Counted from the first letter of the stretch, positions 20,901 through 56,358 are shown. The stretch is DNA of 64,000 bases from Macrostomum lignano (GCA_002269645.1 NIVC01000225.1:222678-286677); one strand, 5' to 3'. Numbers and translations are program-made. The notes: generated by a model not told the origin, from the sequence alone.

Positions 20901-23900
20901 CTCAGATCTCCAATCCCCTGACAGGCTAAGATGCCCAATCCCCTGACAGGCTCAGATCCCAAATCCAATGACAGTCTCAGATCCCCAATCCCCTGACAGG
21001 CTCAAATCCCCAATCCCCTGACAGGCTCAGATTCCCAATCTTCTGACAGGCTCAGATCCCCAATCCCCTGACAGGCTCAGATCCCCAATCTCCTGTCAGG
21101 CGCAGATCCCCAATCCCCCGACAGGCTCAGATCCCCAATCTCCTGTCAGGCGCAGATCCCCAATCCCCCGACAGGCTCAGATCCCAAATCCCCTGACAGG
21201 CTCACCTGCTTGCTGATGTCGCTGCCCGCCAGGCCCATGGCGATGCCGATGTCCGCCTGCCTGAGCGCCGGCGAGTCGCTCACGCCGTCGCCAGTGACCG
21301 CCACCACGTGACCCAGGCGCTGGCAGCTCTCCACAATGACCAGCTTCTGCTGCGGGGTGGTCCTGGCGAACACGAGCTCCCGGTGAGTGCGCACCAGCTC
21401 GTCCAGCTGGCCGCTGGTCATCTCGGCCAGGTCGGAGCCGTGAACCACGCAGGCGTCGGCCTCCCGCGGGTCCACGTGGGACGGGTCGACGCCGCGCTCC
21501 AGTGCGATGTCCTCCGCCGTCTTGCTGCGGCTGCTAATGATGTCCACGTGGCGGGCGATGGCCTTCGCCGTGATTGGGTGGTCGCCCGTCACCATGATGA
21601 CCTGGACAGGTGGCGGTGAGATTCGGATGGGCAGTGGCTGAGATTCGGGTGAGACAGTGGCTGAGATTCGGGTGAGCAGTGGCTGAGATTCGGGTGAGCA
21701 ATGGCTGAGATTCGGGTGGGCAGTGGCTGAGATTTGGGTGAGATAGTGGCTGAGATTCGGGTGAGCAGTGACTGAGATTTTGGTGAGCAGTGGCTGAGAT
21801 TCGGGTGAGCAGTGGCTGAGATTCGGGTGAGCAGTGGCTGAAATTCGCGAGATTCGGGAAAAGCTAGCATGTCACGCTAGCAACTGCCTACTTATAAGTA
21901 GCAAAACACGAGCACGAACAGAAAAGTTCATCCCTGCGCTCTCCCAGCTCCTCACCTTGATGCCTGCGGAGCGGCACTTCTGCACGGCGTCCGGCACGGA
22001 AGCCCTGGGCGGGTCAATCATGGAGATGAGGCCGAGAAACCGGAGCCCCATGAGCGGGAAGTTCACCTCCTCGGCGTTGAACTCGTATCGCTCGTCGAAT
22101 TCGTCGGCGGACAGGCGGAGGTCGCAGAAGCCGAGGACCCGCTCGCCCTGGCCGCCCAGCTCGTTGTAGGCGGCGAGAAAGGAGCGGCGCCACTGGTCGG
22201 AGGTCTGCACCTCGCGGCCGTCAACCAGCAGGTGCGAGCATCTGTCAAAGATGATCTCCGGAGCGCCCTTCATCACCAGTAGGAAGTTGGAGCCGCGCTC
22301 CCGCATCACGTGCACGGAGGCCTGGGGCGAGGCGGAGGGGTGAAGAGGCACTTCCGGTGAATATTCTTGCTTAGAGTGAAAAGTCAATACTAAGTCACTT
22401 CCAATCCAATATTCTAGTCACTTCCGGTTTCGATGGAAAAGGCAATCCAATAGTCTAGTCACTTTGGTTTAGAGGGAAAAGGCAATCCAATAGTCTAGTC
22501 ACTTCCGGTTTAGAGGGAAAAGGCAATCCAATAGTCTAGTCACTTTGGTTTAGAGGGAAAAGGCAATCCAATAGTCTAGTCACTTCCGGTTTAGAGGGAA
22601 AAGGCAATCCAATAGTCTAGTCACTTCCGGTTTAGAGGGAAAAGGCAATCCAATAGTCTAGTCACTTCCGGTTTAGAGGGAAAAGGCAATCCAATAGTCT
22701 AGTCACTTCCGGTTTAGATGGAAAAGGCAATCCAATAGTCTAGTCACTTCCGGTTTAGAGGGAAAAGGCAATCCAATAGTCTAGTCACTTTGGTTTAGAG
22801 GGAAAAGGCAATCCAATAGTCTAGTCACTTCCGGTTTAGATGGAAAAGGCAATCCAATAGTCTAGTCACTTCCGGTTTAGATGGAAAAGGCAATCCAATA
22901 GTCTAGTCACTTCCGGTTTAGATGGAAAAGGCAATCCAATAGTCTAGTCACTTCCGGTTTAGATGGAAAAGGCAATCCAATAGTCTAGTCACTTCCGGTT
23001 TAGATGGAAAAGGCAATCCAATAGTCTAGTCACTTCCGGTTTAGATGGAAAAGGCAATCCAATAGTCTAGTCACTTCCGGTTTAGAGGGAAAAGGCAATC
23101 CAATAGTCTAGTCACTTCCGGTTTAGAGGGAAAAGGCAATCCAATAGTCTAGTCACTTCCGGTTTAGATGGAAAAGGCAATCCAATAGTCTAGTCACTTC
23201 TCGCCTCACCTGGAATTTGTTGGCGCTGCTGAACGGAACCTCGCAAATCTTGGGATGTTGGCGCCGGAACTCCGGCACGCCGCCCACGCACCACTCCATG
23301 TACTTGAGCAGCGCGGACTCGGAAGCGTCGCCAATGCAGTCCCGCTGCAGAATCGGCTTTTCCTCTTCGCCGGCTTTGAACTCCGCCCGGCTGCACAGCA
23401 TGGCGCACCGGCTGAGGGCTACCCAGTCAGGGGACTGCGGAGGCGCCGGGGCCGCGCCTTCGCCCATCTGGACCTCCGCGATGCGGCCGCTCTGCCAGGT
23501 GTGCGTCACCGTCATCCGGTTCATTGTCAGCGTGCCTGGCGGGGGCGGCATGTGGTTTTTTAGTTGAACTCAAGTCTGTTGCTAGGCAGTTGCTATGTGG
23601 TTTTTTAGGTGAACTCAAGTCTGTTACTAGGCAGTTGCTATGTGGTTTTTTAGGTGAACTCAAGTCTGTTGCTAGGCATTTACTATGTGGTTTTTAGGTG
23701 AACTCAAGTCTGTTGCTAGGCGGTTGCTACGCGGTTTTACACCCTCAATAGTCTAGCAATCCCGTTCGCCATCGCTCCCACGCCAGACTCACCGGTCTTG
23801 TCCGAGCAGATGACGCTGGTGGCGCCCAGAGTTTCCACAGCCTCCAGGTTGCGGACGAAGCAGTTCTTCGAGGCCATGCGCTGGGCGGTGAGGGTCAGGC

Positions 23901-33840: not shown

Positions 33841-36800
33841 CTACTTGGTCTCTTTCTTCTCTTTCTTCTCTTTCTTCTCTTTCTTCCCTTTCTTTTCTTT
33901 CTTCTCTTTCTTCTCTTTCTTCTCTTTCTTTTCTTTCTTCTCTTTCTTCTCTTTCTTCTCTTTCTTCTCTTTCTTCTCTTTCTTGCCTTTCTTCTCTTTC
34001 TTGCCTTTCTTCTCTTTCTTTTCTTTCTTCTCTTTCTTCTCTTTCTTCCCTTTCTTCCCTTTCTTCTCTTTCTTCTCCTTATCGCCCTTCTCGCCCTTCT
34101 TCTTGGCCTTGGGCGCCTTGGAAATCTTGTCGTCAGACAGTTTGATCTCCTTCTGGGCCTGGGCGATCCTGCCATTGACCTTGGCCAGACGCCGTTTCAA
34201 GATGTCCTTGTCACTCCTGCGAGAGAAGTAAGCGATGTAGCTGATGTGCCTGGACACCTTCTCGGCAGTCTCAAGGAGGTCCTTGAAATCTTCGATGCAC
34301 TTCTCGGCGAGCTTCTGGTCTCGCTTGGCCCGGGCCTTGTTGGAGGCGACAATGAGCTTGTCGGTCATGCTGTCGGCTTTGCTGGTGGCCTTCTTCAGCT
34401 TGACCGCTTCCTTGTCGGCGAGTTTTCGCGCGTCCTTGCGGCGGATGCGCGGCACGGAGTCGGAGGCCGAGCGGACCAGGCGGCGCAGTGGCCGCATGAT
34501 GCTCAGGACGATGTCTGACACCTCGGAGGCCTGGCGGACAACCTCCAGCGAGGCTGCGAGAATTTGGTAGTCGGGTTACGTTGGGTTAGGCTTGTAATCT
34601 TGCCTATGTTTAGTGACACGGCAGCCGATAATTTGTACGCAATGAACCTACTATTTGATACGCTCACGGATCGATGGATTCCAGCTTACCGTATGGCATG
34701 AATTGTGCGCAATGAACCTACTATTTGATAAGCTCACGGATCGATAGATTCCAGCTTACCGTATGGCAGAGTGGAGAAGCTGGATGAGTCAATCTTCAGT
34801 TTGGTTTTTCCAACCTTCAGCTTCAATTCCTCCTCTTCCACCAGCGACTTGAGCTTCTCGATCTTGCTGCTGCGCACCAGGCCGGAGACGAGCAGCTTTC
34901 GGGACACGTACAGCTTGCGGATGGTGTAGGGGTGAATCCGCAGCGCCTTGGCAAGGCCGTTCCTCACGGCGCTCAAGAATTTGCTCTTCTGCTTCTGAGA
35001 GTCGCCAACAGTGGAAACGTATGAGCCCTTGACGGTGAACTCGAACTGAGCCAGGTCCTTGGCTGCAGGGGTTTGAAATGGTTATTTAAGAAGAGCCCTG
35101 TCGGTTTTAACTTGTTTTGAGCAGGGAAATCATCAACATTGACTTACGATCGACCTTCTTGAAGCCCATCTCCTCCCAGTTGATCTCAACGTTTCGCGAC
35201 AGCAGATCCCGGATCTTGTCTGCAATTGGTTGTTCAGTTATAAAGTCCGTTGTTGGTCATTACCGGAATGAGTAGAAAACCGAGCACTTACTGGTATATT
35301 TCGCCTTCATCGAAACCTTGTTAACTTTTCCAACTCTGCAGGTGGCAGAGATGATGTCATCTACGAACTGCGGCTCGACCAGCTCGCTGAATGTGCTTGT
35401 CTTGAAGCTGTGGATGCCGTGCGGCACCGTTGCAATGCTGTCGAGCTGCTTTTCCTGGATGTCATCGCCAACTCCGACGGTGATGATTCGGCAGCCCAAG
35501 GCTTTGACCTTCGCGGCCTCCTTGATCGGGTCGACCTTGCTGTTGGAGGCTCCGTCGGTAACCAGAATGACGACACTCTCGACGCCCTTGCTCTCGCCAC
35601 CCCGATAGCCATTGACCTTGTTGAGCAGAAAGCGGCGGAAGGCCTTGATGGCGTCTCCGGTGTAGGTGGAGCCTGGAGAATATTCCATCTCCATCACTCG
35701 AGTGGTCATGGAGTCCAGGTGGTAGTGGGCGACGTAGTTGAAGATCACCTTCATTCTCTGCACGCTGGAGAACTTGAGCAGAGCCACGTGCGTGTTGTCG
35801 CGAGAAACGTCCAGCTTCTTTGCTACGGCAACAATAAAGCGCCGAATGTGCTCGAAGTTCCTGCCGCGAACGGAGTCAGAGGAGTCGATTAGGAAAGCGA
35901 CGTCCATGCGCTTGCTGCAGGTGCGCTTGCACTTGGCCGATCCCGTCCACAGAATGTCATCGCACTGGTTGCGGCTGTTGACTCGCTGGGTGTACACTTT
36001 GATTGGCACAATCTTGCCATTGCAATGGCCAGTTTCCACCGCCGGCTTGGGGCAAGAGCAGCGGATCTCCTTGGTGCGTCTGCGTTGGATGCAGCCGCGA
36101 GTGAGGCGGTTGAACTCGTAGAAGGTCTCATACATGATCTTGAAGTTGTTCACACACGGCAGGTATTTGCGGGTGGGCTTTGGGCAGGCTGAAATGCATT
36201 CATCAGTGATAGTTTTTTCATTCGACAAGACGGAATGCCATAAATTGTTTAAAAACTTACCGCATCTCGCAGTCTTAGTCTTAGTCACTGCTTTGCAATG
36301 ACCGCCAGATTCGCCACCACTGATCAGCTTGTACTGCAGAATGGTGGTCTTCCTGTACTGGTTCTCGCATTTGCCAATGGTTTTCTTCGGACCGGGGCAG
36401 CCACAGCGGACTCTACTGTCCTTGGAGGAGCTTTCGCAAATGCCCTTCTTTTTATTTAACTTGAAGTAGGTAGTCGTAATTTTTTTAAACATTTTTTCGC
36501 ACGGACCCGCCTTTGTGTCCGGCTTCGGACACGCGCAGCGCACCTTCTTAAAGTCCTGCTTCACAACCTTCTTGCAGCCGTAGCCCTTGGGCACGTACTC
36601 AACCCGGTGGATGGATTTGTAGTTGCCGACGCAGTCGCCATTGATTAAATACGGGTGCGGGCACACTGCAATTTCGGGCAATACAGAGTTAAGCAAGCTG
36701 GGTTATTAGCTTGAGTAATCCATCAAAGACACTCACGTGGCCTCTCGCAGTGGAAGGTGAGAACTCGGGCAACCAGGCCGTGGATGTCCTGGAACTCGCG

Positions 36801-39800
36801 CAGGCCGAAGATGAACACGCGGCCCTCGGGTCCGGCCAGCTTGGCCAGCTGGGCCCTGTTCTGCTTGGACTGCTCGCCGATGGCGATCGTGACGAAGAAA
36901 ACGCCAGACCGCCTGACCAGCTTGGACTCGTAGAACTGGTCAACCTCGCCGTTGGATTCGGCACCGTCCGTGAGCAGGATGGTGACGTGGGGCACGTCCT
37001 CTCGCATGCCGGCGTGCTTCTGCCACATCTTGGTGCGCACCTCGTGCAGCGCCTCGCCGAGGAAGGTGAGACCGGGCTCGTACTGCATGGCCTCGATCTT
37101 CTTCAGGATCTCCTCGTGCGAGTTGTGCTCCCAGCTGTTTAGGTCCATGACAATCTTGTTCTTGTGGCTAAAGCGCATCACGCCGATTCGCTGGCGCTCA
37201 CCGTTCTTCATATAGAACTGCTGGACAACGTCGCGAACGAAGTTTTTCATGATGTAGAAGTTGTGCTCGGTCACGGTCAGGGACGAGTCCAGCATGAAGA
37301 TCACGTCGGCCTTCTGAATGCAGACTGAGAAGTTTGAGAGAGTTTACCTTAGATGGATTCTTGCTTGAAAGTTGAAAGGAGAAAAGGTGCGCTTATTTTC
37401 TAGCATAGCCTTGCATCCGCGCCAGTTACTCACTGGGAACGTTCGGGCAGTCACTGGGGTGCACGCATTTGCCCTTGTGCAGCAGGAAGTACGGCCGGCA
37501 CTCGCACTGCGGCCGTCGCTCCTTGGGGCACTTGCTGAACAGCACGGGCTCGTTGCAGGTCCTGGGGCAGCCGGAGCCGCGCACTCGGAAATACTGGTGC
37601 CCGGGGCAGGGCGTGGGTTCGTTGCACTTTCCCTTGTAGTAGTACTTCTTGCCGGTGCACACTGCGGGTAGGCAATGCGGCAGAAAGAAATTGGTCGGGC
37701 TTCAAATATTTGCCCGAATTCCACTTGTGTGGATATGAGCTCCACTATTCATTCAATCTGAAAAAGAGGATCTGACACTACTGGGAAGAACCAGTTTGAT
37801 TCGGATCCTTACTCTTCACGCAGCGGCCATCCTTGGTCTTCTTGAAGCCGGGGTCGCAGCCGACTTTGTAACATTTTCGGTCAGAGCGCAGCTTGTAGCC
37901 CTTGGGGCACTTTATGGCTGAAATTCGAGACGTGAAATCCTCGTGAGCGCTCATAGCTAATCCCAGCTGAGTCTCACCACCTGCACTGGGCCTGCCTGCC
38001 TACCTTTCTTGCAGATGTCTCGGAACAGGATCTGGCCTGGAGGGCAGTACTTGCGCACCTTCGGCATGCATTTGCCATCGAAGAATTCCGTTTTGGGCGG
38101 ACAGTCGACTGAATGTTTTTTGTTGCAATGGGCGGAGGAATTGAGTAGGGAATGGAAAAACTGATTGGCATGGATGCGAAGTCAGGCAATCAATTTAATT
38201 GAATTCAGTTTAATGCAACAGAATATTTTAACTGCAGTGTTCTGCGAAAAAGGAATGCAATGATAAATAAAATCTCTGCTTTGCACTGCACTGTGGCAAC
38301 AAGGCGGATTAAGCTGGGCTACATTTGCTTGAATTGAAAGCAAAGCAGATGCTGGAACTGCACTGTGAACAATGGAGTAGCAAAAGGTAGGATTTCGTTT
38401 TAGGATACGGCTGCGAGGGGAGATCAATTCGCCTCACCTTTTCTGCAGGTGCAGGTGGCTTTGTTCAGCGCCAGGCCCTTGCGGCAGCGCATTTTGCATT
38501 CGCACCGGCAGTCGCTCTTCTGGTCAAAGTTTCGGCCCGGGCACTTCTTCTTGCACTCTACAAGTCAATTAGACAGCTTTGGTGGAGCACTGGAGCTTGT
38601 TTCAGTCAAGGGGATTGGGGATTAACTTCTTGCGCAAGGCAAGGCTTTGGAACTCAATATTTACCACAGGCACAGAGCTTAGCGTTGAGTTTCTTTTCTC
38701 CTTTGCAGGATTTCTTGCAGACCTTGGCCTTCTTGGGCTTCGAGGGCACGTGTCGGGGCACGCAGACGCAGCCCTTGACGAGGATCTCCGACTCCTTGCA
38801 GCTCTTCCTGCAGTCATCGCTGACGGACACGTTGGGGACGCACTTGCACGGGACCACCAGCATAAAGCCCTTGGGGCATTTCAGGCTGCACTTGGGTTTC
38901 ACTGGAATTGAGGGAGCAAAATTCATACTGCTCATGCTGCTCAAAGCAAAATACGCGCTGCTCAGTGCTCAAACGACGCTTCTGACTCACATGGGACGCA
39001 CTCTCGGGCGATCATCTGCAGTCCCTTGCCGCAGGACTTGAAGTCTTTAACCGAGGCAGCCTTGCCGCCTTCGCACAGGATGTCGGTGATAACCTTGCCG
39101 ACTTTGCCGAGGTCTTCGAAATCGTTGACAACCGTGACGTACTTCTTATTGCTGGCCAGCTTCTCCAGGGCGCTCCTGGAGATGCCGGTGCCGATGCCGA
39201 GCGCCAAGACGGAGGCGCCCATCTTGCGTAGCTTGTTGGACTCGGCAACGGGGTTGGCGCGGCCGTTGGCGCGACCGTCGGTAAGAAGCACCACCACCGG
39301 CTTGGCCTCGGGGCGGTGGCCGTTCGCCTTCTGGAAGCCCTGCTCGCGGATCAGCTGGAAAGCCTCACCGGTGACGGTCTTGCCGGATTTGTACCTGAAT
39401 TTTGCCAGGTAGTTCGTGTGCGACCAATTCGGCATGGGTGAAGTACTGGGAAGCTGAATGTGCAACTTTTCCATTTTCAGAGGGTCGCTAATCAAACTCT
39501 AACAGCTTCTTAGTTTACAGCTCAAAAAGCAGACGGTAACCTAGTTGTAGCTTCTCATGTTGCGAGCGTGCATTGCAAGCGCTCGGGCATCTGCCCTCTT
39601 TTGTACTAAGGTGTCTGTCTGCTTGTGGTGATAGGCAGGAGGCACAGCTAGACTCAGAGGCTTACTCAAGGTCGTGCAGCAGGAACTGCAGCATGGCCTT
39701 CCGTTCCGCGGGCTTTCTCATGGAGTAGTCCTTCAGCTTGATGACCATCTCCGCCTTGTCCGAGAAGATCACGACGCCGAAGCGGAAGTTGCTGGATTTG

Positions 39801-41586
39801 CGCAGCAGTTTGGAGACGATCTCGTGAATGAATTTCGTCACCAGAGCGAAGTTCCTCCGGCCGACGGAGTGGGACGAGTCCAGTGCGAAGAAAATGTCCG
39901 CCTTTTGGCTGCAGCCTGGATTGCGTGGTGGGGCCGGCGTGATTGTTCTGGGATTTGCAGCAGAGTTCAAAGCGAAAGCCGGCAAGCAGGCAGACAGTCG
40001 GACCGGGCCCGGGGCTTGGGGCTTTCCCAGGGATTGACTGGCCAGGAGGCAATGCCAGAAAGATTTAAAAGCAGACTTTGGCGACGATGCAAAAGCAAGG
40101 AAGAATTCCCCAAAGGTTTTTAATTAGTAGTTTATAATGTACTGTTTAAGGTTGAAAATATCGCTTGGGTCGCAGTAGTGCTCGTATTAAGTCTTGTTTA
40201 CACTTTTTTCAACAGATGTTTTCTTTAGCGTAGAGGCCTGAACTACTTGCAGTAGTGTGGTTCAAAGATGAATTTAAATTACCGAATTACCACGAGAAAT
40301 TCTAGGCAGTGCATGTCAATGCCTAGGCAATGCCAATCGCGAAAGCGGTCCAATTTTTGCGCAAGAAGCATCGCGAATGTTAGGCTAGGAAATTTTACGC
40401 GTGTTTTTTTTACATAATTTTGAGACACTTACGTAATGCTGAATTTTTTTTTGCAAAAAAAGTTGAAGATGCATTGTTAGAGACAGTCAATAATATTGGG
40501 GTTTCACATCGCACAGACAGACAGGTAGGTGCCTAGCACATTGTCTATGGCTCTGATGGATAGGTAGGTGCCTCGCACACTGTCTATGGCTCTGATGGAT
40601 AGGTAGGTGCCTCGCACACTGTCTATGGCTCTGATGGATAGGTAGGTGCCTCGCACACTGTCTATGGCTCTGATGGATAGGTAGGTGCCTCGCACACTGT
40701 CTATGGCTCTGATGGATAGGTAGGTGCCTCGCACACTGTCTATGGCTCTGATGGATAGGTAGGTGCCTCGCACACTGTCTATGGCTCTGATGGACAGGTA
40801 GTGTCTAGCACACTGTCTATGGCTCTGATGGACAGGTAGTGTCTAGCACACTGTCTATGGCTCTGATGGACAGGTAGTGTCTAGCACACTGTCTATGGCT
40901 CTGATGGACAGGTAGTGTCTAGCACACTGTCTATGGCTCTGATGGACAGGTAGTGTCTAGCACACTGTCTATGGCTCTGATGGACAGGTAGTGTCTAGCA
41001 CACTGTCTATGGCTCTGATGGACAGGTAGTGTCTAGCACACTGTCTATGGCTCTGATGGACAGGTGGCAGTTTAAACGTCCTGCATTGGAAGTTGTTAGT
41101 TGCATCCTGAGTCCTTTCAGCGGCTCCCTGAGGCGAACTCATAGATACGAGCTAAGCGTACAAGGATAGGAAAAGCGGAAGCGACAAGCGGAGCATGCAA
41201 CCAGGTTGGACCGCTGCAGCGCAGTTGCAGACCGGTCATTGAAATCAATAGCAAATTTCTGCACAAATAAAAATATCGGTACTTACTTTTACCTGAGAAT
41301 TGAGGTGTATGCACGTAGTTAGGCGTGTTAGAAGTGTGTCAGTAGTCAGGTTAATTAGTCAAAATGGCAAAAACCAAGGCGTGACTGAGAAGGGCCACTG
41401 ACTCAATTTCTGTTCTAGTGCAAACTTTGTGAGGCTGTAGGCCTCCGGAAAGCCGAGTGGCTACTCACCATCCTTGCTGATCTCAGTCAGCGTGCTGAGC
41501 ACATCGCTGTCAGCGGCTGCAACATTGCCTTGGAGCACCAGCGGCAGCAGCAGCAGCGCTGGGAACAGTGACATCAGGCGCTGCAT
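33841..41586 (-). CDS. Secreted multidomain protein (~1514 aa): SP-VWA-CXCXC repeats-TIL-VWA-5 Cys repeats-VWA-SEA-like module-Lys/Glu-rich tail; exons 41586-41469, 39915-39666, 39394-38991, 38901-38665, 38557-38438, 38108-38004, 37917-37813, 37661-37434, 37324-36737, 36665-36261, 36188-35292, 35219-35148, 35062-34760, 34553-33841
   Basis: All 13 introns are GT-AG and phase-compatible (total 4545 nt). Signal peptide MQRLMSLFPALLLLPLVLQGNVAA. VWA MIDAS motifs DSSHS/DSSLT/DSSDS with LxTDG. TIL-like CPGHQYFRVRGSGCPRTC...CECRPYFLLHKGKCVHPSDC. KKEKKE tail ending TAG at 33841-33843. The SEA-like assignment is tentative. Confidence 0.85.
40515..41062. repeat. 39-bp/38-bp two-subfamily minisatellite in intron 1 of the VWA gene
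   Basis: taggtaggtgcctcgcacactgtctatggctctgatgga, then gtgtctagcacactgtctatggctctgatggacaggta units. Confidence 0.93.
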
Positions 41587-42854: not shown

Positions 42855-45404
42855 CCTGCGGCGCCAAGATGAATTCCTACCTGCCAAAATGAGTGCCTGC
42901 GGCGCCAAGATGAATTCCTGCCTGCCAAAATGAGTGCCTGCGGCGCAAAGATGAATTCCTGCCTGCCAAAATGAGTGCCTGCGGCGCCAAGATGAATTCC
43001 TGCCTGCCAAAATGAGTGCCTGCGGCGCCAAGATGAATTCCTGCCTGCCAAAATGAGTGCCTGCGGCGCCAAGATGAATTCCTGCCTGCCAAAATGAGTG
43101 CCTGCAGCGCCAAAATGAGTGCCTGCGGCGCCAAAATGAGTGCCTGCGGAGCCAAAATGAGTGCCTGCTGCGCCAAAATGAGTGCCTGCGGCGCCAAAAT
43201 GAGTGCCTGCGGAGCCAAAATGAGTGCCTGCGGCGCCAAAATGAGTGCCTGCGGCGCCAAAATGAGTATTGACGCCAAAATGAGTGCCTGCAGCGCCAAG
43301 ATGAGTGCCTGCGGCGCCAAAATGAGTGCCTGCGGCGCCAAGATGAGTGCCTGCGGAGCCAAAATGAGTGCCTGCAGCGCAAAAATGAGTGCCTGCGGAG
43401 CCAAAATGAGTGCCTGCAGCGCAAAAATGAGTGCCTGCGGAGCCAAAATGAGTGCCTGCAGCGCAAAAATGAGTGCCTGCGGCGCCAAAATGAGTGCCTG
43501 CGGAGCCAAAATGAGTGCCTGCGGCGCCAAGATGAGTGCCTGCGGCGCCAAGATGAGTGCCTGCGGCGCCAAGATGAGTGCCTGCGGCGCCAAGATGAGT
43601 GCCTGCGGCGCCAAGATGAGTGCTTTCGGCGCCAAGATGAGTGCCTGCGGCGCCAAGATGAGTGCCTGCGGCGCCAAGATGAGTGCCTGCGGCGCCAAGA
43701 TGAGTGCCTGCGGCGCCAAGATGAGTGCCTTCGGCGCCAAGATGAGTGCCTGCCTGCGGCGCCAAGATGAGTGCCTTCGGCGCCAAGATGAGTGCCTTCG
43801 GCGCCAAGATGAGTGCCTGCCTGCGGCGCCAAGATGAGTGCCTGCCTGCGGCGCCAAGATGAGTGCCTTCGGCGCCAAGATGAGTGCCTGCGGCGCCAAG
43901 ATGAGTGCTTTCGGCGCCAAGATGAGTGCCTGCGGCGCCAAGATGAGTGCCTGCGGCGCCAAGATGAGTGCCTGCGGCGCCAAGATGAGTGCCTTCGGCG
44001 CCAAGATGAGTGCCTGCCTGCGGCGCCAAGATGAGTGCCTGCGGCGCCAAGATGAGTGCCTGCGGCGCCAAGATGAGTGCCTGCGGCGCCAAGATGAGTG
44101 CCTTCGGCGCCAAGATGAGTGCCTGCGGCGCCAAGATGAGTGCTTTCGGCGCCAAGATGAGTGCCTGCGGCGCCAAGATGAGTGCCTGCGGCGCCAAGAT
44201 GAGTGCCTTCGGCGCCAAAATGAGTGCCTGCGGCGCCAAGATGAGTGCCTGCGGAGCCAAAATGAGTGCCTGCAGCGCAAAAATGAGTGCCTGCGGCGCC
44301 AAAATGAGTGCCTGCGGAGCCAAAATGAGTGCCTGCCTGCGGCGCCAAGATGAGTGCCTGCGGCGCCAAGATGAGTGCCTGCGGCGCCAAGATGAGTGCC
44401 TGCGGCGCCAAGATGAGTGCCTGCGGCGCCAAGATGAGTGCCTGCGGCGCCAAGATGAGTGCCTTCGGCGCCAAGATGAGTGCCTTCGGCGCCAAGATGA
44501 GTGCCTTCGGCGCCAAGATGAGTGCCTGCCTGCGGCGCCAAAATGAGTGCCTTCGGCGATAAGATGAGTGCCTGCGGCGCCAAGATGAGTGCCTGCCTGC
44601 GGCGCCAAGATGAGTGCCTTCGGCGCCAAAATGAGTGCCTGCCTGCGGCGCCAAGATGAGTGCCTTCGGCGCCAAAATGAGTGCCTTCGGCGATAAGATG
44701 AGTGCCTGCGGCGCCAAGATGAGTGCCTTCGGCGCCAAGATGAGTGCCTGCGGCGCCAAGATGAGTGCCTGCGGCGCCAAGATGAGTGCCTGCGGCGCCA
44801 AGATGAGTGCCTGCGGCGCCAAGATGAGTGCCTGCGGCGCCAAGATGAGTGCCTTCGGCGCCAAGATGAGTGCCTTCGGCGCCAAGATGAGTGCCTGCCT
44901 GCGGCGCCAAAATGAGTGCCTTCGGCGATAAGATGAGTGCCTGCGGCGCCAAGATGAGTGCCTTCGGCGCCAAAATGAGTGCCTTCGGCGCCAAAATGAG
45001 TGCCTTCGGCGATAAGATGAGTGCCTTCGGCGCCAAGATGAGTGCCTGCCTGCGGCGCCAAGATGAGTGCTTTCGGCGCCAAGATGAGTGCCTGCGGCGC
45101 CAAGATGAGTGCCTGCGGCGCCAAGATGAGTGCCTGCGGCGCCAAGATGAGTGCCTTCGGCGCCAAGATGAGTGCCTGCCTGCGGCGCCAAGATGAGTGC
45201 CTGCGGCGCCAAGATGAGTGCCTGCGGCGCCAAGATGAGTGCCTGCGGCGCCAAGATGAGTGCCTGCGGCGCCAAGATGAGTGCCTGCGGCGCCAAGATG
45301 AGTGCCTGCGGCGCCAAGATGAGTGCCTGCCTGCGGCGCCAAGATGAGTGCCTGCGGCGCCAAGATGAGTGCCTGCGGCGCCAAGATGAGTGCCTGCGGC
45401 GCCA
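42855..45404. repeat. 21-bp (25-bp variant) GC-rich minisatellite (gcggcgccaagatgagtgcct), 2.5 kb
   Basis: Tandem array; source of the 810-888 aa pseudo-ORFs. A 2-unit remnant reappears at 54057-54097. Confidence 0.96.
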
Positions 45405-45420
45405 ACGCTTCACTTCAGCC

Positions 45421-45825
45421 CACTTCAGCCCATCAAAAGTATCTACAGTAATCTTTTTTCTTTTTGAATGCTTTCATTTTTTAACTTGCTGCTTGAAAAT
45501 AAATTAAGAGAGTTTCCAAAGGACTTTACTGACAGTAGCAGTAAACGAGTTTGCGTTAAACATTATTAAAATTTTTTCACGCGTCATGAACGATTGTGTA
45601 AAATGAATTGTAACATTATGTGTTACGTCTAAAGAAGTAGTTGAACAGCCTCATTTATTAAGCAAAAATGAAAACTATACTGGTTTATGCTGTACTACTG
45701 GGAAATATATTTATTCTCCTGATATGTTGATTGACAGAATAAAATATCAGACGAATAATATGTTGCCAAGCGCTATGTATAATTATATAAAGATGAGTCC
45801 AGGAACAGTATTACTTTATTATTTT
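45421..45825 (+). repeat. 405-bp segment A, present three times: direct copies at 45421-45825 and 54392-54796, inverted copy at 53444-53848
   Basis: Constant offset 8971 between the direct copies; begins cacttcagcccatcaaaag. Confidence 0.92.
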
Positions 45826-45945: not shown

Positions 45946-47949
45946 ATGACCACTTGGGTGAAGAAAAAGAGAACAGGAGAGAGGTTGCTACTAAGTGCCA
46001 TTAGGGATACCAGTTCCAGCTCTCATGACGAGGAAGAGGGCATTTGTATGAAAAAATCATCATTGCCCAGTGGAGCAGTTTGTTCTAAATGGACATTGGG
46101 TAGTCAACCTGAGGAAGGAGATAAAAATCATCAGGAGGATAGTAATAACAATTCGCCATCTGAATCCGTCTCCTCCGATTCAGAGACTGACGACTATGAC
46201 GACCATGAATCTGATGTAGATCTGAGTGAGGCTTTGAAAGAATGGGCAATATCCGACAACATCCCACAGGCCTCTTTGCGACGTCTTCTGGCTGTTCTGC
46301 GCAAGAAAGACCCATCCCTTCCTATTGACCCGAGAACGCTGCTTGACTCTCCCCAGGTTGTATTAGGAGTTAAACACGTTGATCCAGGTAGCTATTATCA
46401 TTTTGGGCTCCTGGATGGGATTAAAAGGCTACTTGACGATGTGGGCTTTGAGAATAATGTCAACTTGAACCTGGTTTTAAACATCGATGGTGTACCACTT
46501 TTTTCATCGACTGTGGACGGCTTTTGGGTGATTCTAGCCGCATTTCGTGAAATTCGGAATTCTGTCTTTGTCGTTGGAATCTACCACGGCAAGGCAAAGC
46601 CTCAGAGTGCCGAGGATCTTCTCACGGATACTATTGAAGAGTTAAAGACGCTGGAGCAAAATGATTTGGAGATTCGACCCGGTGTGAAAATTCTCCTTGC
46701 GTGTGTTTGCTGCGACACACCCGCACGCGCTTTTGTCAAGAATGTCAAAGGCCACTCTGGCTACTATGGTTGTGACCGTTGCATTGCAAAAGGTATATAC
46801 ATTTGTAACCGTGTTGCTTTCTCTGAGAATGGTACTCTCCGAAGTGACGCCACCTTTCGCGACAGAACTCAACCGGAGCATCACCACGGACCGAGCCCCT
46901 TTGAATCCTTGTCTATTGACATGGTGGCTCAGTTTCCACACGACATGTTGCACCTTATCTGCAAAGGAGTGACACTGAAGCTGCTGGAAGTATTAAGCAA
47001 TGGTCCAAATAAGTACAGACTCGGCCAGAATGAGAAAAGGTACTTTGATCAGCTTATAAAAGAGACCTGCAAGGTTCTTCCTTGTGACTTTGTTCGAAAG
47101 GTGAGCCCTATTCGCCACCTTCACAAATGGAAGGCGACTGAATTGCGACTTTTTACAGTGTACATCATTCCGTTCGTCATCCCCAAGGTTGTACGTGATT
47201 CAAAGCTACAAACTATATTCATGACGTATTTCATCGCTATCTACATCATGTGCTGCGAAAGGAAACAATACCAAGGAGCGCAGAGCGTTGAATACATTCG
47301 CCGCCTTGTGTCATATATGCACGATCTCCTTCGCGATGCTCTCGGAAATGCATTTTTCACATACAATATTCACAACCTTCAGCACCTAGTTGATGACTTC
47401 AACCGGTTTGGTCCAATAGACACATTTAGCAACTTTAAGTTTGAGAACTTCTTGAGATTCATCAAGAAGAAGATTCGATCGCCCAGTCAACCACTGAATC
47501 AGATTGTCAAGCGAATACATGAGAGTGGACAGTTTCTTGGGCAGCGTCCTGTATCCCTATTGGGAATAAAGTCCCTGACACCCTTGCAACCCATCATTCG
47601 TGATGAGGGTGTAGCTTACCGGCGACTCGTACTGAATGATGTCAACACCATCCTGAAGAGGAAATCTCCGGATTCATTCGTCTTAACCTCTGATCACAAA
47701 GTCTTCAAAGTTTCTCATTTTGTGAAGGAGGGCGACGATATCAGGGCCATTGGCCGGCTCTTTTGTAGCCACGACAACTACTTTCTATTGCCGTTGCTGT
47801 CCATGGATTTAGACATTTTCAAAGTGTCTGAATTGTCGCGCTCGGTTTCTGTCGTACCTGTTGAACATATCATGTGCAAAATGTTCCTCTTTCCAGACGA
47901 CGGTGGCCACCAGTTGGCCATACCACTTGCTCATACTTTCCGTCAGTGA
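45946..47949 (+). CDS. EnSpm/CACTA-like transposase (Tnp2-like), 667 aa
   Basis: Motifs LNIDGVPLF, CCDTPARAFVKNVKGHSGYYGCDRC, DMLHLICKGV, KWKATELRLF and YNIHNLQHLVDD...FGPIDTFSNFKFENFL, recognised from family knowledge. Preceded by a ttcag acceptor, so an upstream exon may be missing. Confidence 0.85.
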   Translation: MTTWVKKKRTGERLLLSAIRDTSSSSHDEEEGICMKKSSLPSGAVCSKWTLGSQPEEGDKNHQEDSNNNSPSESVSSDSETDDYDDHESDVDLSEALKEWAISDNIPQASLRRLLAVLRKKDPSLPIDPRTLLDSPQVVLGVKHVDPGSYYHFGLLDGIKRLLDDVGFENNVNLNLVLNIDGVPLFSSTVDGFWVILAAFREIRNSVFVVGIYHGKAKPQSAEDLLTDTIEELKTLEQNDLEIRPGVKILLACVCCDTPARAFVKNVKGHSGYYGCDRCIAKGIYICNRVAFSENGTLRSDATFRDRTQPEHHHGPSPFESLSIDMVAQFPHDMLHLICKGVTLKLLEVLSNGPNKYRLGQNEKRYFDQLIKETCKVLPCDFVRKVSPIRHLHKWKATELRLFTVYIIPFVIPKVVRDSKLQTIFMTYFIAIYIMCCERKQYQGAQSVEYIRRLVSYMHDLLRDALGNAFFTYNIHNLQHLVDDFNRFGPIDTFSNFKFENFLRFIKKKIRSPSQPLNQIVKRIHESGQFLGQRPVSLLGIKSLTPLQPIIRDEGVAYRRLVLNDVNTILKRKSPDSFVLTSDHKVFKVSHFVKEGDDIRAIGRLFCSHDNYFLLPLLSMDLDIFKVSELSRSVSVVPVEHIMCKMFLFPDDGGHQLAIPLAHTFRQ

Positions 47950-48668
47950 GACAGAGCTTACTTTTTTAACATACTGCAAAGGTTTGATGTGTCTGCATTC
48001 AGAAGCAAATGCTATTCTTTAAACTTTAATCATGATACTTTTCTTTAGCTGTTATAATTTTGTACGTAAATTTATTTTAAGGTTCTAATAATATGTTATT
48101 TTCTTTAATTACGAGCTAGATTCTGTTTCAAAATATTCTACTCATGTTTGAACTTGCAACTTATAGGCTTTTCTGTAAGCGTGTGGCAGCCTTGGACGTA
48201 GATCAACCAGTCGATGCAAAAAATTGAAGCATAGCAGATTGTTTAGAATCTTCAGCGTATACATATAACAGTAGTAATAGCAAAATTAATAATAATAATA
48301 ACAATTTCTTAGCATCAAACCGTCCAGGCCTGACAAGCGTAGCCAATTAAACATACTACTACTGTAATTTCGCCTCCTCAAAGTATAATTAATAAAATTA
48401 CTCGTCGCAGTATAATATGGCCGTATTTTTGGCAACTTATTTGGTACTAAAATACATCAAAGCTGCTCTGTTCATCAATTATGTAGAAATCTCAAAATAC
48501 AAGTATTGCAATAGTAGATTCATGAATCTGTAATGTTATAGAAAAGAGCTGTAATAAAATCAGCGTAGATAAGATTATTTAATTTACTGCAGTTTTATAT
48601 ACTAATAGAACATTACAACCTTTTTTCATGCATTTGAAGCTCTGAAACACCTCCAGTGTATCACAATT

Positions 48669-50521
48669 ATGAACACTGCAAAGTATCACCTAGTAAGCTT
48701 CGACGATGGCGCTCAAATTGTGCTGGACAGTTGGCTGTTCCGGGATGAAGATGGCAATGTCTTCTGCCTCCTCCCCAAGACAACCAAAGCTACTCAATGT
48801 ATGCGCAACAAAACTGAACCACACCCATCCTGGAGGGAATTCAAGGTGTCGGAACAGCTCATGTCTAGTGGTACGTTTTTAATGCTCTCTTCATGTCGAA
48901 CAGTGCTAGTAATATAGTAGTATAATAGTATATTTAGATACAATGGTGAATCTATTGGGTAGAGTCAATGTTGCCGTCATTTTTGCCATGCTGTACTCCT
49001 TGAGCTCCCCGCAGCTCTCGACATCGAGTTGAACGCCCTGTGGAAGTCCACAACACACACAGACAAAGGTCGATTGTGGTATGGGAAACCATACACACTG
49101 AAGGCTGGCACGACTCAACCTAAAAGCGCATGTATTTTTCGTAAATATGATTGCAGATTTTGCCTTACCCTTTCAGATAATCTGAACTTTCTCACTTATC
49201 GGCTGAAGCGATTGGAAGAAAAGAATAGTTTGAGTGAGACAGAAGTTGAGAGGAAACGACAAAGGCCGGCAGTAGAGAGGCTGGTTGATGGCTTTAGGAC
49301 ATCGTCGATTCCTGCTTCATCTTCCACTAGATCCAAAAAGACATCGAACATGCCACCGTCGTCTTCGGCTTCGGTTGTCGTATCTGAGCTTGCGTCACCA
49401 CCTCCGCCTCCAGTTTTTCAACTATCGCCTTCACCACCTCAAGCATCAGTTACCGTACACGATACATTCGAGAGCCAATCTGTGCTGGAATCTGCTACAC
49501 AGGATCCTGACTTGAGGAGAAAGAATGAAACTGCCAGTTGCAACCGTCACTGCTGTCACATGGAGAGTACATTGCCTTTTAATTTGATTTCATCTGACTT
49601 TACTCTGACAGTTTCAGTTTTTTGTATTGTATTGCGCTCGCGTGATACATGTCTCTACTCTGTTCTAGTGGTTATTTTACTACCTATTTGTAAATTCATG
49701 CCAGTATAAACAAATGCATGCGTTTGTATTGTTACTGCAGAGTGGCTGGCGAAGCTCTTTACCGAAATGAAGGAAATGAAGGAAGAGATCTGAGCGTTAA
49801 GGTGTGGAAATACTACTGATGGCAATGGGATGTTGCACCAGTTGCCCATGAGCAGTGTAAACGGGCTCCTGTCCTTCGCCGATGAGATAGCCACATGTAC
49901 GGAAAAGAAGTCTGTCTTGGTGAGAGAAAATTTATAATTTTCTTACGTATGATCAGCTTCCTTTTTATCTACGAGCTCGTATGTACTTATTATTTAGTTG
50001 CTTATTTTCACATGTATTCCTGTACCTTTGCCGTATTCGTGCTACCTGCACGTATCGATCACTAGTCCTACCAGTAGCTTGCAAAAATCTGAATTTTAGA
50101 TTCACTACCTGTCCGGCTTCGCTGATGATGGCGTCAGTATCAGCCGAGTGACGACCACTCTGTTGAAGAAAATCGCCCTGCCATCTATGTTTAGTATGTT
50201 TACAACAACTGGCCGGCAGGATTCACGCATATTTCCCATCGGGCTTACTGCGGCCATAGAAAGTAAGTATGTTCGAACATGTGAAATCAACCTCTGTATG
50301 TATAGTCGCTCATTGTGACGCATGAAATACGTGTATATACACTGTACGTCATACTAATTGGCTCATCACTTTGTTTCACAGGAGTCATTCATAATAACAA
50401 GCGATTGAGATCTCGTTCACGAGGCGTTGGAGCGCAACATTTTGTGGCCGAGTCCTTGAAGCATATCAAACTCAAGGAGAAGAAGCGCGTAGAGACTGCG
50501 GATGACGTGAGGGAAACTTAG
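48669..50521 (+). pseudogene. Spliced accessory ORF of the transposon (DUF4806-like), with an in-frame TGA at 49791-49793
   Basis: N-terminal YHLVSFDDGAQIVLDSWL...CLLP motif. Candidate exons 48669-48870, 49177-?, 49741-49919, 50100-~50262 and ~50382-50521. C-terminal LPMSSVNGLLSF...IHYLSGF segment. The family call is from memory of animal EnSpm second ORFs. Confidence 0.55.
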
Positions 50522-51883
50522 ACTTCGCTGTTGCTCTTCCTTCATTTTGGCTTCCTTCATTTGGCTTCTTCTTTCATCTCTCATGATGCCAGCTCATGCT
50601 GGAGAACTATAGTAGCTTGAATATTTTGTAAAGTTCAATCATGCAGCTGTTATCATACCTTTCATAAATCCATCAATTTTGACCATCTTACGAGCGTACA
50701 TGGATATCATGTAACTGTATTGAAAATGGAGCTTGAAAATTGGTTCTATGATTGATTTTGCATTACCGAGTTCTAAGACATAAATTATAAAATGGGTAAC
50801 TTTAAGCATAAATAAAAAATTTAGACTTTAGTTGTGTAAATAATAAAAAAGCAACAATTAGATTTGAACGCATTTAGCCAGAGTCCGTAGGTATAGCGTT
50901 ACCTGCGCCAAAAAATTTTCCAGAATGTGAGCACGTCTTCAAGTGTTCTCTATGAACAACATGCAGCTATAGCTACACACAATCATTTAAATTTATTACG
51001 CTTGTGTTGCTTCCTTTTTGTTCAGTAAAACCAAATATTGTTTTGAACTGTCGTTCGTGCACATGTCTACTGTTCTATTGTTTTTCACTACACTGTTTTG
51101 TATTATTTTACACTATGATACTATCTCTCATTTCCACTTCGATTGTTTCCAATAGCTAATATTCTAATATAGTATTCCATAGTATTCCATAGTATTCCAT
51201 ACTTCTAGTATTGCAAATTTCTACTCCGTAGCTTTTTATTATTGCTCTATACTTTCTATTATTCTACAGGCTACTAGCTCTGTTGCTATGCTCGCATTTG
51301 TCTTCATCCTTGGATTTGTTCCATGCCACTGTTTTCTACATTAACTATATTCTGTTTTGTTTGTACTAACTTTTTGGCGCTATTTTCCGTTCTCCATCTT
51401 TTAATCTAATTTTTTTACCGTTCCTTTTCATGAATTTTCATATGCTAATATAAGAATATACTCGTAAATTACAATTTGTACCCGGTATTTCAAGCGTGGT
51501 TAGTGTGCATTACTTATATCCACACACATAATTCAATAAGGTTGACTTCAGAATGCAGAGATAACTTTCAATCATAAAGCTAGTAACATTTATTTTCTTG
51601 AAACTTCATACAAGTCATTTTGTACATTGAAAAAGCCATTTTTATACGGTAAAATTTCAGTAAATTTTTTACGTCAAAACAACGTCACAAATCTAGGTCA
51701 AAATTACGTAAAAAATATCGACAGAATTGACGTCATTTCGACGTCATAGTTTGACCGATTTTCAACGTCATTTTGACGTCGCGCAACGTCACTTTGCTAC
51801 CCGGGCAACCGTGTAACCATGCACAGTCGCCAGAGTGTAAATCAATCCGTGCTTTTCGGTGAGGAGGCATCCAACGAATTGAC

Positions 51884-51916
<33 letters not shown>

Positions 51917-52029
51917 CTTTTCTATTTCTAAGAAGCCGGGGCACCACACTGCTTGAAGAGCATCGATCGAGGCATCTGCCTTCAGTCCCGCGCTGCGAAG
52001 CTGTACTGTGTTCAGTTGGATGCTGTTGT

Positions 52030-52390
52030 TGAGGTTGCACATATAGCGGATCCGTACAGAACAGGTTTCGGCCCCATCGCAGCACAGTGGTGCAGATCCT
52101 GGCTCTTCGTCCTGGAGTCGCGGATTTGTCAGTAGATCCCGATTGAGATATCTTAATAGATTTCAAGAAGGCCTTCAACGACCGGTCGTCAGAGCCGCGT
52201 GCTTTCAATGGTGCTTCTTCGAGACATTCTCTTGGGTCCTTCTACTAAAGTAGTCCTTGTGCGCTAGCACGGCGTTCCTGCTTCTTCTGGTGTTTGACTG
52301 GGTGCTTCAGAATGCTCTTCCTACCAACGACGATGGCCGTCTGCTGTGCGACGCGTGGGTCGACGCCAACCGGAGAGGCTCTGACTTCGT
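52030..52390 (+). pseudogene. Decayed non-LTR retrotransposon reverse-transcriptase fragment (mirror ~55850-56210 on -)
   Basis: Frameshifted motifs in RT order: FRPHRSTVVQILALR, IDFKKAF, FLLLLVFDWVLQNALP. Confidence 0.65.

Positions 52391-56323: not shown

Positions 56324-56358
<35 letters not shown>

What the first reader, a model, noticed from the sequence alone, without database searches (positions are those of the whole stretch)
33841..41586. Large secreted VWA/Cys-rich/poly-Lys protein: candidate adhesive, mucus or matrix component
Seen: signal peptide, three VWA domains, silk-like CXCXC repeats, a TIL module, an unclassified Cys repeat, an SEA-like module and a strongly basic tail. There is no transmembrane segment, and the protein is Lys-rich throughout. 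Knowledge: the Macrostomum adhesive proteins are Mlig-ap1 (K/R-rich, VWA-containing) and Mlig-ap2 (TIL, vWD, TSP), both far larger. CXCXC repeats occur in Chironomus Balbiani ring 3 silk protein. Inference: a compact protein combining cohesive cationic and cross-linking modules, perhaps for glue, egg-shell cement or mucus. I do not recognise this architecture.
Basis: partly seen in the sequence, partly recalled or inferred. Interest (0 to 1): 0.7.

Follow-up and report, generated by a model that had tools for sequence, protein, structure and literature searches.

The report
Flatworm secreted lysine-rich multi-VWA protein
This is a real, intact Macrostomum lignano gene for a 1514-residue secreted, strongly positively charged protein with three VWA binding domains, cysteine-braced spacers and a lysine tail; it belongs to a small uncharacterised flatworm family and is probably an extracellular cross-linker, but where it is made is unknown.

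Summary
It has a signal peptide, three VWA domains with MIDAS motifs (canonical in two, DxSxT in the second), one TIL, two Pfam-less Cys-rich regions, a four-helix region and a 90-aa (E/G)KK tail. K is 15.5%, pI 9.8, and there is no membrane segment. Only the "SEA-like" label could not be verified.

The organism is Macrostomum lignano. Database models of the same gene and a collinear 56%-identical paralogue (Mlig006812) confirm the exon joins piecewise, so the model is not a chimera. It is not a matrilin or collagen orthologue: there is no EGF, no matrilin coiled coil and no triple helix, and similarity is VWA-only (22% identity).

New here: two full-length transcripts from unidentified organisms and a fragment from the monogenean Cichlidogyrus share TIL-VWA-5xCys repeat-VWA-module-helices. 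Both full-length ones end in a Lys-rich tail. The ~45-aa Cys unit has no Pfam model or PDB relative and forms long arrays in other proteins from M. lignano, Cichlidogyrus and a metagenome.

I found no expression data. The gene is absent from published M. lignano adhesion proteins and in situ screens. An adhesive, cement or mucus role remains plausible but untested. Moderate interest.

The parts
33841..41586 (-). Whole coding gene, 14 exons, 1514 aa. Exons (high..low): 41586-41469, 39915-39666, 39394-38991, 38901-38665, 38557-38438, 38108-38004, 37917-37813, 37661-37434, 37324-36737, 36665-36261, 36188-35292, 35219-35148, 35062-34760, 34553-33841
   Evidence: all introns are GT-AG and 12 of 13 are phase 1. 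Exon joins are confirmed by database models P0028, P0001 and P0029 and by the paralogue P0002.
41512..41586 (-). Signal peptide (aa 1-25)
   Evidence: Only hydrophobic window in the protein. The same start is used in the NCBI model P0028. The cleavage site was judged by eye (AAA|D).
39085..39898 (-). VWA domain 1 (aa ~46-226), split by a phase-2 intron; MIDAS DSSHS...T...D
   Evidence: Pfam PF00092 in two pieces, E 1.5e-12 and 9.4e-18. MIDAS. This domain is absent from the foreign relatives P0032 and P0040.
38439..38991 (-). Cys-rich region A (aa 258-376): five C-x9/10-C-x-C units, 20 Cys, 22% Lys
   Evidence: 5 observed against 0.88 in shuffles, P = 0.002. Conserved in P0002, P0032 and P0040. 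No Pfam or PDB match.
37814..38438 (-). Four C-P-x-G...C hairpin units on two 105-nt phase 1-1 exons (aa 377-446)
   Evidence: Conserved in the family alignment. No Pfam family above threshold.
37435..37813 (-). TIL domain (aa 447-522), 10 Cys, one exon
   Evidence: Pfam PF01826, E 9.8e-9.
36756..37307 (-). VWA domain 2 (aa ~529-712), MIDAS DSSLT...T...D
   Evidence: Pfam PF00092, E 3.1e-32. MIDAS. 72% identical to the paralogue.
35905..36737 (-). Five tandem ~44-aa Cys units (aa 719-948), an undescribed module; includes a 72-nt phase-1 intron (36260-36189)
   Evidence: AlphaFold gives pLDDT 72, each unit three long beta strands. No PDB fold or sequence match and no Pfam match. A profile search finds only 10 proteins in 1.84e9.
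35344..35904 (-). VWA domain 3 (aa ~949-1135), MIDAS DSSDS...T...D
   Evidence: Pfam PF00092, E 5.5e-38. MIDAS.
34761..35328 (-).
   Evidence: Alignable in 5 family members, but with no Pfam or PDB match, and the AlphaFold pLDDT is below 50.
34114..34760 (-). Helical region (aa 1278-1424): four helices of 30-38 residues
   Evidence: AlphaFold pLDDT 85-90 for this part. Foldseek gives only generic and designed helical bundles, best E 0.09. 33% identical to the paralogue.
33844..34113 (-). Polycationic (E/G)KK tail (aa 1425-1514), 63% Lys, net +34; encoded by a 9-bp tandem repeat
   Evidence: Basic tails of different sequence end the relatives P0032, P0040 and P0002.

Best explanation
The gene encodes a secreted, strongly cationic, disulfide-rich modular protein. 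It belongs to a small family known from flatworms, with the core TIL - VWA - 5x novel Cys beta-repeat - VWA - small module - four long helices - basic tail. Macrostomum adds an extra N-terminal VWA.

Most likely it is a structural cross-linker of an extracellular, polyanion-containing secreted material (glue, cement or mucus type) rather than a receptor or an enzyme. The proposed parts of the mechanism are:
- The three VWA domains, which carry MIDAS metal-site residues, bind partner proteins.
- The Cys-braced beta-hairpin arrays act as stiff spacers and possible disulfide cross-link sites.
- The C-terminal helices may oligomerise the protein.
- The overall positive charge, and above all the Lys tail, condense it with sulfated or acidic glycans or negatively charged surfaces.

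Shown: gene structure, domain content, charge, family membership, and conservation of a basic tail in both full-length relatives. Inferred: secretion (from the signal peptide only), partner binding, oligomerisation, polyanion binding, and above all the tissue of origin.
For: - Intact 14-exon gene with phase-1 module exons.
- Signal peptide and no TM segment.
- 3 VWA plus TIL, with MIDAS residues in all three VWA domains (DxSxS in two, DxSxT in VWA2) and in the paralogue.
- 68 Cys, K 15.5%, pI 9.8, net +165. Every non-VWA module is net positive.
- All four full-length family members are basic (pI 8.9-10.2) and end in a basic tail: 31-65% Lys in three, Arg-rich in the paralogue. The tail sequences are not alignable with each other, which points to selection on composition.
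- The family is patchy and fast-evolving. The profile search returns only M. lignano, Cichlidogyrus and three unidentified sources among 1.84e9 representatives. Paralogues are 62-72% identical in the domains but 26-33% in the C-terminal part. This fits lineage-specific secretions better than core matrix.
- In M. lignano, the cohesive adhesion protein Mlig-ap1 is reported to work through Lys/Arg-rich regions that heparin blocks (PMC6410801).
Against: - There are no expression, localisation, proteomic or knock-down data for this gene or its paralogue.
- It is not among the published adhesive-organ proteins, which are described as just two proteins in M. lignano.
- No in situ probe in the complete primer table of PMC7336406 maps to Mlig011403 or Mlig006812.
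- Its VWA domains are most similar to matrix VWA proteins: matrilin-2, collagen VI and VWA2.
- The tail is a young-looking 9-bp coding microsatellite, and no transcript evidence covers it in this gene.
- Oligomerisation is a guess. AlphaFold shows a monomeric helical bundle with pTM 0.48.
Confidence: 0.45

Rival explanations
1. Interstitial or basement-membrane matrix adaptor that works like matrilins or AMACO/VWA2. VWA domains separated by small Cys-rich modules bridge collagens and other matrix proteins. The C-terminal helices make oligomers. The basic tail acts as a heparan-sulfate retention motif.
For: - The best non-flatworm hits are matrilin-2 (E 1e-25), collagen VI chains and VWA2.
- The layout is the same: VWA - small Cys modules - VWA - C-terminal helices.
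- The family also occurs in a parasitic monogenean.
- The gene was not picked up in tail-specific in situ screens.
- A different M. lignano protein built from the same Cys unit (Mlig000808.g3) is expressed evenly along the body axis.
Against: - No EGF, no matrilin coiled-coil domain and no collagen helix.
- Similarity is limited to the VWA fold (22% identity).
- The whole protein is extremely basic (pI 9.8, net +165). From general knowledge, that is unusual for core matrix proteins.
- The profile search returned no named flatworm relatives other than M. lignano and Cichlidogyrus, and the C-terminus evolves fast.
Confidence: 0.3
2. Specifically a component of the duo-gland adhesive organs or of the egg shell/cement glands: a compact cohesive partner of Mlig-ap1/ap2 or of the giant cement-gland protein RNA815_13.
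For: - It shares TIL, a high Cys content and cationic low-complexity sequence with Mlig-ap1.
- M. lignano shell/cement glands express a giant protein (transcript RNA815_13, 16,136 nt) whose best BLAST hits are VWA-type proteins (collagen VII/VI-like; PMC4490696).
- A cationic tail would fit the reported charge-based attach and release model.
Against: - Footprint and tail proteomics and two in situ screens reported only Mlig-ap1 and Mlig-ap2.
- No VWA protein is listed in the Macrostomum, Minona or Theama adhesion papers.
- RNA815_13 is a different gene.
- No probe maps to this gene.
Confidence: 0.17
3. The locus is a decaying or mis-modelled gene. The (EKK)n tail would be a recent microsatellite expansion without function, and the protein would not be made as modelled.
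For: - The gene lies in extremely repeat-rich DNA.
- The tail is a 9-bp tandem repeat.
- The copy in GenBank contig NIVC01001059.1 has 1-bp gaps in exons 8 and 12, and a >7.6-kb 70-bp satellite replacing the end of exon 13.
- One ab initio model (P0029) splices the repeat out.
Against: - The window copy has an uninterrupted 4545-nt CDS across 14 exons with canonical splice sites.
- The repeat has 0% indels.
- The paralogue and two foreign transcripts keep the full architecture, including a basic tail.
- The NCBI model for the N-terminal half (P0028) matches exons 1-8 and follows the exon 8-9 join.
Confidence: 0.05

Closest known systems
Matrilins (matrilin-2 is the best named hit)
   Same: Secreted; VWA domains carrying MIDAS motif residues, separated by small disulfide-rich modules; alpha-helical C-terminal region. 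VWA-level similarity at E 1e-25.
   Different: No EGF repeats and no matrilin coiled-coil domain (PF10393). Three rather than two VWA domains. Has a TIL, two Pfam-less Cys repeat types and a poly-Lys tail. Only 22% identity, confined to VWA. Not an orthologue.
AMACO / VWA2 and collagen VI N-terminal VWA arrays
   Same: Several VWA domains in one secreted protein with Cys-rich linkers; both appear among the profile hits.
   Different: No EGF, no collagen triple helix and no Kunitz domain. The scores come from the VWA domains alone.
Macrostomum adhesion proteins Mlig-ap1 and Mlig-ap2 (PMC6410801)
   Same: Same species; secreted; Cys-rich; contain TIL. Mlig-ap1 carries strongly cationic Lys/Arg low-complexity regions that mediate cohesion.
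   Different: ap1 and ap2 are 5,407 and 14,794 aa and are built from vWD/C8/TIL, a C-type lectin, EGF, LDLa and TSP1 domains, with no VWA. This protein has no vWD/C8, lectin, EGF or TSP1. Its cationic tail is 90 aa, against more than 3,600 aa in ap1. It is not reported in footprints.
VEGF-C / Chironomus Balbiani ring 3 'C-x10-C-x-C-x-C' silk-type repeat (pattern recalled from memory, not tested against those sequences)
   Same: Region A has five C-x9/10-C-x-C units, two of them exact C-x10-C-x-C-x-C. These are conserved in the family.
   Different: Pfam CXCXC (PF03128) does not match even at E<=10. The resemblance is a spacing pattern only.
Mussel byssus proximal thread matrix protein PTMP1 (from memory)
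   Same: A VWA-based binder inside an extracorporeal secreted holdfast material, which shows that VWA domains are used outside classical matrix.
   Different: Unrelated architecture (two VWA domains only). No comparison was run here.

Membership tests
VWA domain superfamily (PF00092) | Three Pfam VWA matches above the gathering score | tested here: met
   131.4, 112.6, and 48.5+65.5 bits against a cutoff of 23.8.
VWA domain superfamily (PF00092) | MIDAS motif DxSxS...T...D present | tested here: met
   DSSHS, DSSLT (S to T at the last position) and DSSDS, with a T-loop and a TDG in each domain.
TIL (PF01826) | Pfam match with a 10-Cys pattern | tested here: met
   E 9.8e-9, 35.7 bits against a cutoff of 24.5.
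Matrilin | EGF-like repeats between the VWA domains | tested here: not met
   No EGF family in any Pfam scan.
Matrilin | C-terminal matrilin coiled-coil (PF10393) | tested here: not met
   no hit at E<=10 in the C-terminal 378 aa. The matrilin-2 hits carry PF10393; this protein and its relatives do not.
Collagen VI/VII | Collagen triple-helix repeat (PF01391) | tested here: not met
   No such Pfam hit and no Gly-X-Y run in the sequence.
Gel-forming mucin / vWF-type polymer | VWD-C8-TIL assemblies, PTS-rich region, C-terminal cystine knot | tested here: not met
   Only TIL was found. S 6.8%, T 4.2% and P 4.0%.
SEA domain | Sequence or fold match to SEA | tested here: inconclusive
   No Pfam hit at E<=10. 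A 5-sequence profile against PDB gives nothing relevant. The AlphaFold model of this part has pLDDT below 50.
CXCXC repeat (PF03128; VEGF-C/BR3) | Pfam match | tested here: not met
   no hit at E<=10.
CXCXC repeat (PF03128; VEGF-C/BR3) | C-x10-C-x-C-x-C spacing pattern | tested here: met
   two exact units and three C-x9/10-C-x-C units, P = 0.002 against shuffles. Conserved in P0002, P0032 and P0040.
Macrostomum adhesive-organ proteins (Mlig-ap1/ap2 class) | Expression in adhesive gland cells and presence in footprints | not testable with these tools
   No expression data were reachable. The gene is not listed in PMC6410801 or in the in situ primer table of PMC7336406.
Macrostomum adhesive-organ proteins (Mlig-ap1/ap2 class) | vWD/C8, lectin, EGF or TSP1 modules; kilobase-scale KR or 221/255-aa repeats | tested here: not met
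   against the description.
Proposed family: TIL-VWA-5xCys repeat-VWA-module-helices-basic tail (seen so far in flatworms and unidentified samples) | Collinear alignment over the whole core with P0002, P0032 and P0040 (P0034 is partial) | tested here: met
   (E 8e-144 to 3e-17 on the Cys repeat).
Proposed family: TIL-VWA-5xCys repeat-VWA-module-helices-basic tail (seen so far in flatworms and unidentified samples) | Basic C-terminal tail | tested here: met
   net charge of the last 80 aa: model +30, P0032 +21, P0040 +23, P0002 +12.

The most novel reading that the evidence does not exclude
This family is a so-far-missed third kind of flatworm holdfast or cement protein. It would be a compact cohesive cross-linker whose VWA domains tie the giant glue proteins together, and whose Lys tail is the switch that the polyanionic releasing secretion neutralises. 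Its ~45-aa Cys unit would be a new extracellular fold so far seen mainly in flatworms.
Probability: 0.15. Interest if true: 0.7.

Novelty: new variant of a known kind. Interest (0 to 1): 0.4.

Why it matters
If it is part of a secreted glue, cement or mucus, this would be a small protein (1.5 kb of modules) that can be expressed. It combines metal-dependent VWA binding, disulfide-braced spacers and a polycationic tail. That makes it far more tractable for biomimetic adhesive work than the 5,400- and 14,800-residue Macrostomum glue proteins.

Independently of function, the work defines a family seen so far in flatworms and unidentified samples, plus a repeat module of about 45 residues with no Pfam model and no structural relative. 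The module is also used in long arrays by other proteins from Macrostomum, a monogenean parasite and a metagenome.

If it turns out to be a general matrix adaptor, it is an ordinary lineage-specific matrisome member.

Tried and rejected
- Pfam at E<=10 on the two Cys regions and the C-terminal 378 aa gave nothing usable: no SEA, no CXCXC, no coiled-coil family.
- Foldseek against PDB gave no significant match for the Cys-repeat model (best E 0.35; SasG G5-E at probability 0.28). For the C-terminal model it gave only generic and designed helical bundles.
- PDB sequence and profile searches on all three unclassified regions gave nothing.
- The search for homologous proteins with the C-terminal 291 aa returned no hit at all, not even the known self-matches. 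That search is therefore uninformative.
- The profile search with the full family alignment was swamped by generic VWA proteins and did not return the true relatives.
- I searched for expression data by gene ID (Mlig011403, Mlig006812) in the full text of the library and in the supplements of PMC7336406, PMC5816591, PMC10786194 and PMC11398382. There were no hits. The large tables are stored truncated before these IDs, so only the complete in situ primer table (S11) counts as a real negative.
- I searched exon 21-mers in the supplements of PMC5977470 and found none.
- I tested whether the gene is RNA815_13, the shell/cement-gland transcript whose best BLAST hits are VWA-type proteins. It is not: that transcript is 16,136 nt and has a different 5' coding end.
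- I tested whether the related Cys-unit array proteins are Mlig-ap2. They are not: the repeat period is 225 aa, but the published ap2 epitope peptides are not visible in their sequences (read by eye).
- I tried to name the source organisms of P0032 (SRR8820788) and P0040 (JGI 3300078644). No paper in the library cites the run.
- Lengerer et al. 2018 (Dev Biol) is not held.


Full report
**1. What is in the sequence**

Stop-free stretches on the minus strand between 41.6 and 33.8 kb can be joined through canonical GT...AG introns into one reading frame. A 72-nt AT-rich stretch inside the largest ORF is itself an intron (G|GTAAGT...TTTCAG|CC). The database model P0001 and the paralogue both skip it.

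The final model has 14 exons and 4545 coding nt, giving 1514 aa. The ATG is at 41586 and the stop ends at 33841. Twelve of the 13 introns are phase 1, and most modules sit on their own phase 1-1 exons. This is the classic signature of shuffled extracellular modules. The one phase-2 intron splits VWA1.

**2. Is it one real gene?**

The best database hits are Macrostomum lignano proteins. Three independent predictions of the same gene overlap to cover every splice junction:
- P0028 (NCBI BOX15_Mlig011403g1) uses the same start codon. It covers exons 1-8 and follows the exon 8-9 join out of frame.
- P0001 covers exons 2-13.
- P0029 covers exons 2-14.

A 56%-identical paralogue (Mlig006812.g1-g3, 1621 aa) is collinear over 98% of the model. 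Two intron-less, full-ORF contigs from other organisms carry the same order of modules from the first Cys region to the tail. One is Logan SRR8820788, 4842 nt. The other is JGI sample 3300078644, 4154 nt.

**3. Domain content**

Pfam finds three VWA domains and one TIL. All three VWA domains carry MIDAS metal-site residues: canonical DxSxS in VWA1 and VWA3, DxSxT in VWA2, plus the T and D positions. The paralogue has the same motifs.

Region A (aa 258-376) contains five C-x9/10-C-x-C units. Two are exact C-x10-C-x-C-x-C. Shuffles of the same region give a mean of 0.88 units (P = 0.002). The spacing is conserved across the family, but Pfam CXCXC does not score. 'Silk-like' is therefore only a pattern resemblance.

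Two 105-nt exons each add two C-P-x-G...C hairpins.

Between VWA2 and VWA3 lie five tandem ~44-aa units, C-x-C-P-x-P-x4-5-G-x-C-x17-21-C. AlphaFold models each as three long beta strands (pLDDT 72). They have no significant structural or sequence relative in PDB and no Pfam model.

It matches nothing and was modelled with pLDDT below 50, so its fold is open.

Residues 1278-1424 are confidently four long helices (pLDDT 85-90). They resemble only generic helical bundles.

The last 90 residues are (E/G)KK repeats: 63% Lys, net +34. They are encoded by a 9-bp tandem repeat of 25 copies without indels.

Overall the protein is 15.5% Lys (12.5% without the tail), with pI 9.8, net charge +165 and 68 Cys. 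The only hydrophobic segment is the N-terminal signal.

**4. The family**

A profile of the five-unit Cys repeat, searched against 1.84 billion representative proteins, returned only ten sequences. They fall into two groups.

Family members:
- this gene and its paralogue;
- P0032 (1364 aa) and P0033/P0040 (1235 aa), from unidentified organisms;
- P0034, a 540-aa fragment from the monogenean Cichlidogyrus casuarinus, named 'Matrilin 2' by its depositor.

Proteins made almost entirely of long arrays of the same Cys unit:
- several from M. lignano (Mlig000884, Mlig001823, Mlig000808);
- one from Cichlidogyrus;
- one from a metagenome.

P0032 and P0040 align with the Macrostomum proteins from region A through TIL, VWA, the 5 Cys units, VWA, the post-VWA module and the helices. 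They lack VWA1.

All full-length members are basic (pI 8.9-10.2). Each ends in a cationic tail of unrelated sequence:
- (EKK)n in this gene;
- AVKK-type repeats in P0040;
- KPKPK...KKK in P0032;
- an Arg-rich helical extension in the paralogue.

A basic C-terminus therefore looks selected for composition. It does not look like a chance microsatellite in one gene.

Between the two Macrostomum paralogues, the domains are 55-72% identical but the C-terminal third is only 8-33% identical. Lys in this gene is systematically Arg in the other: 60 K-to-R against 4 R-to-K.

**5. What it is not**

- Not a matrilin, collagen VI/VII or AMACO orthologue. There are no EGF domains, no matrilin coiled coil and no triple helix. 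Similarity is about 22% identity within VWA only. Expression could not be checked.
- Not a gel-forming mucin. There is no VWD/C8/CK, and S, T and P contents are ordinary.
- Not a fragment of Mlig-ap1 or Mlig-ap2.
- Not RNA815_13, the giant shell/cement-gland transcript whose best BLAST hits are VWA-type proteins (PMC4490696).

**6. How it most likely works**

The sequence shows a secretory protein with three putative metal-dependent binding domains held apart by disulfide-rich beta modules. It also has a helical C-terminal region and a very high positive charge that peaks in the tail.

From established knowledge of VWA proteins (matrilins, collagen VI, integrin I domains), such domains mediate protein-protein binding through the MIDAS site. 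Cationic Lys/Arg stretches bind sulfated glycans. [quoted passage not shown]

I therefore read the protein as an extracellular cross-linker that condenses with polyanions. Two points make me lean towards an exocrine secreted material (glue, cement or mucus type; 0.45) over a basement-membrane or interstitial matrix adaptor (0.30). The whole family is strongly basic, and it is patchily distributed and fast-evolving at the C-terminus.

A specific role in the adhesive organs or cement glands is possible (0.17). The published two-protein glue model and the complete in situ primer table, where the gene is absent, argue against it.

None of these readings could be tested. The relevant expression tables are stored truncated before this gene's ID, and no other source mentions it.

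**7. Verdict**

The added value of this check is:
- a verified gene model;
- proof that it is a single gene;
- exclusion of matrilin and collagen orthology;
- discovery of a small family with a conserved basic tail;
- recognition of an undescribed Cys-repeat module.

It is a new variant of a known kind (secreted multi-VWA structural proteins). Interest is moderate until someone shows where it is expressed.

Noticed in passing
window 1-33200: The window is almost continuous minisatellite DNA, with more than 25 different tandem arrays. Examples are (CTAA)x496 at 1-1985, a 17-mer x115 at 7387-9427, a 20-mer x92 at 9944-11781 and a 25-mer x54 at 19851-21204. Most long 'ORFs' there are translations of repeats.
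   Followed up: partly
window 42855-45405 and L003 7357-8731: A 21-bp x120 array lies directly upstream of the gene. A syntenic but shorter and diverged array (80-89% identity) sits at the same place in GenBank contig NIVC01001059.1.
   Followed up: partly
window 34633-34768; L003 16405-24053: A 70-bp unit containing the exon-13 splice donor is present 1.9 times here, giving a second unused donor copy in intron 13. In the Mlig_3_7 GenBank copy it is expanded to more than 100 copies (at least 7.6 kb) and replaces the last ~170 nt of exon 13. That copy also has 1-bp gaps in exons 8 and 12. This explains the truncated NCBI model Mlig011403.g1. Whether it is a decayed second copy or an assembly error is open.
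   Followed up: partly
window 45965-62277: A perfect palindrome: arms 45965-54062 and 54178-62277 are 100% complementary with a 115-nt spacer. Each arm carries a ~665-aa ORF with a weak DUF4218 (transposase-associated) hit and a 226-aa ORF. It could be a foldback element or a long-read assembly artefact.
   Followed up: partly
window 40520-41065 (intron 1): A 38-bp x14 minisatellite lies inside intron 1. It is also present, with a different copy number, in the GenBank copy.
   Followed up: no
P0035-P0039, P0043-P0048 (M. lignano Mlig000884, Mlig001823, Mlig000808; Cichlidogyrus Ciccas_003790; one JGI metagenome protein): The ~45-60-aa Cys unit (C-P-x-P-x4-5-G-x-C-x17-22-C-x9-12-C) forms long arrays. 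In M. lignano these are organised as a 225-aa super-repeat with KKKKKK linkers, in signal-peptide proteins that have no meaningful Pfam match. One of them, Mlig000808.g3, is expressed evenly from the head fragment to the whole worm in the re-analysed positional RNA-seq.
   Followed up: partly
window 45421-45825 and 53444-53848: A 405-nt segment next to the 21-bp array recurs, inverted and 100% identical, inside the palindrome. It is 97.8% identical to L003 6658-7062.
   Followed up: no
tool behaviour: The word-indexed protein search with the C-terminal 291 aa returned no hits at all, although P0001 and P0029 contain long identical stretches. Negative results from that tool on Lys-rich queries should not be trusted.
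   Followed up: no
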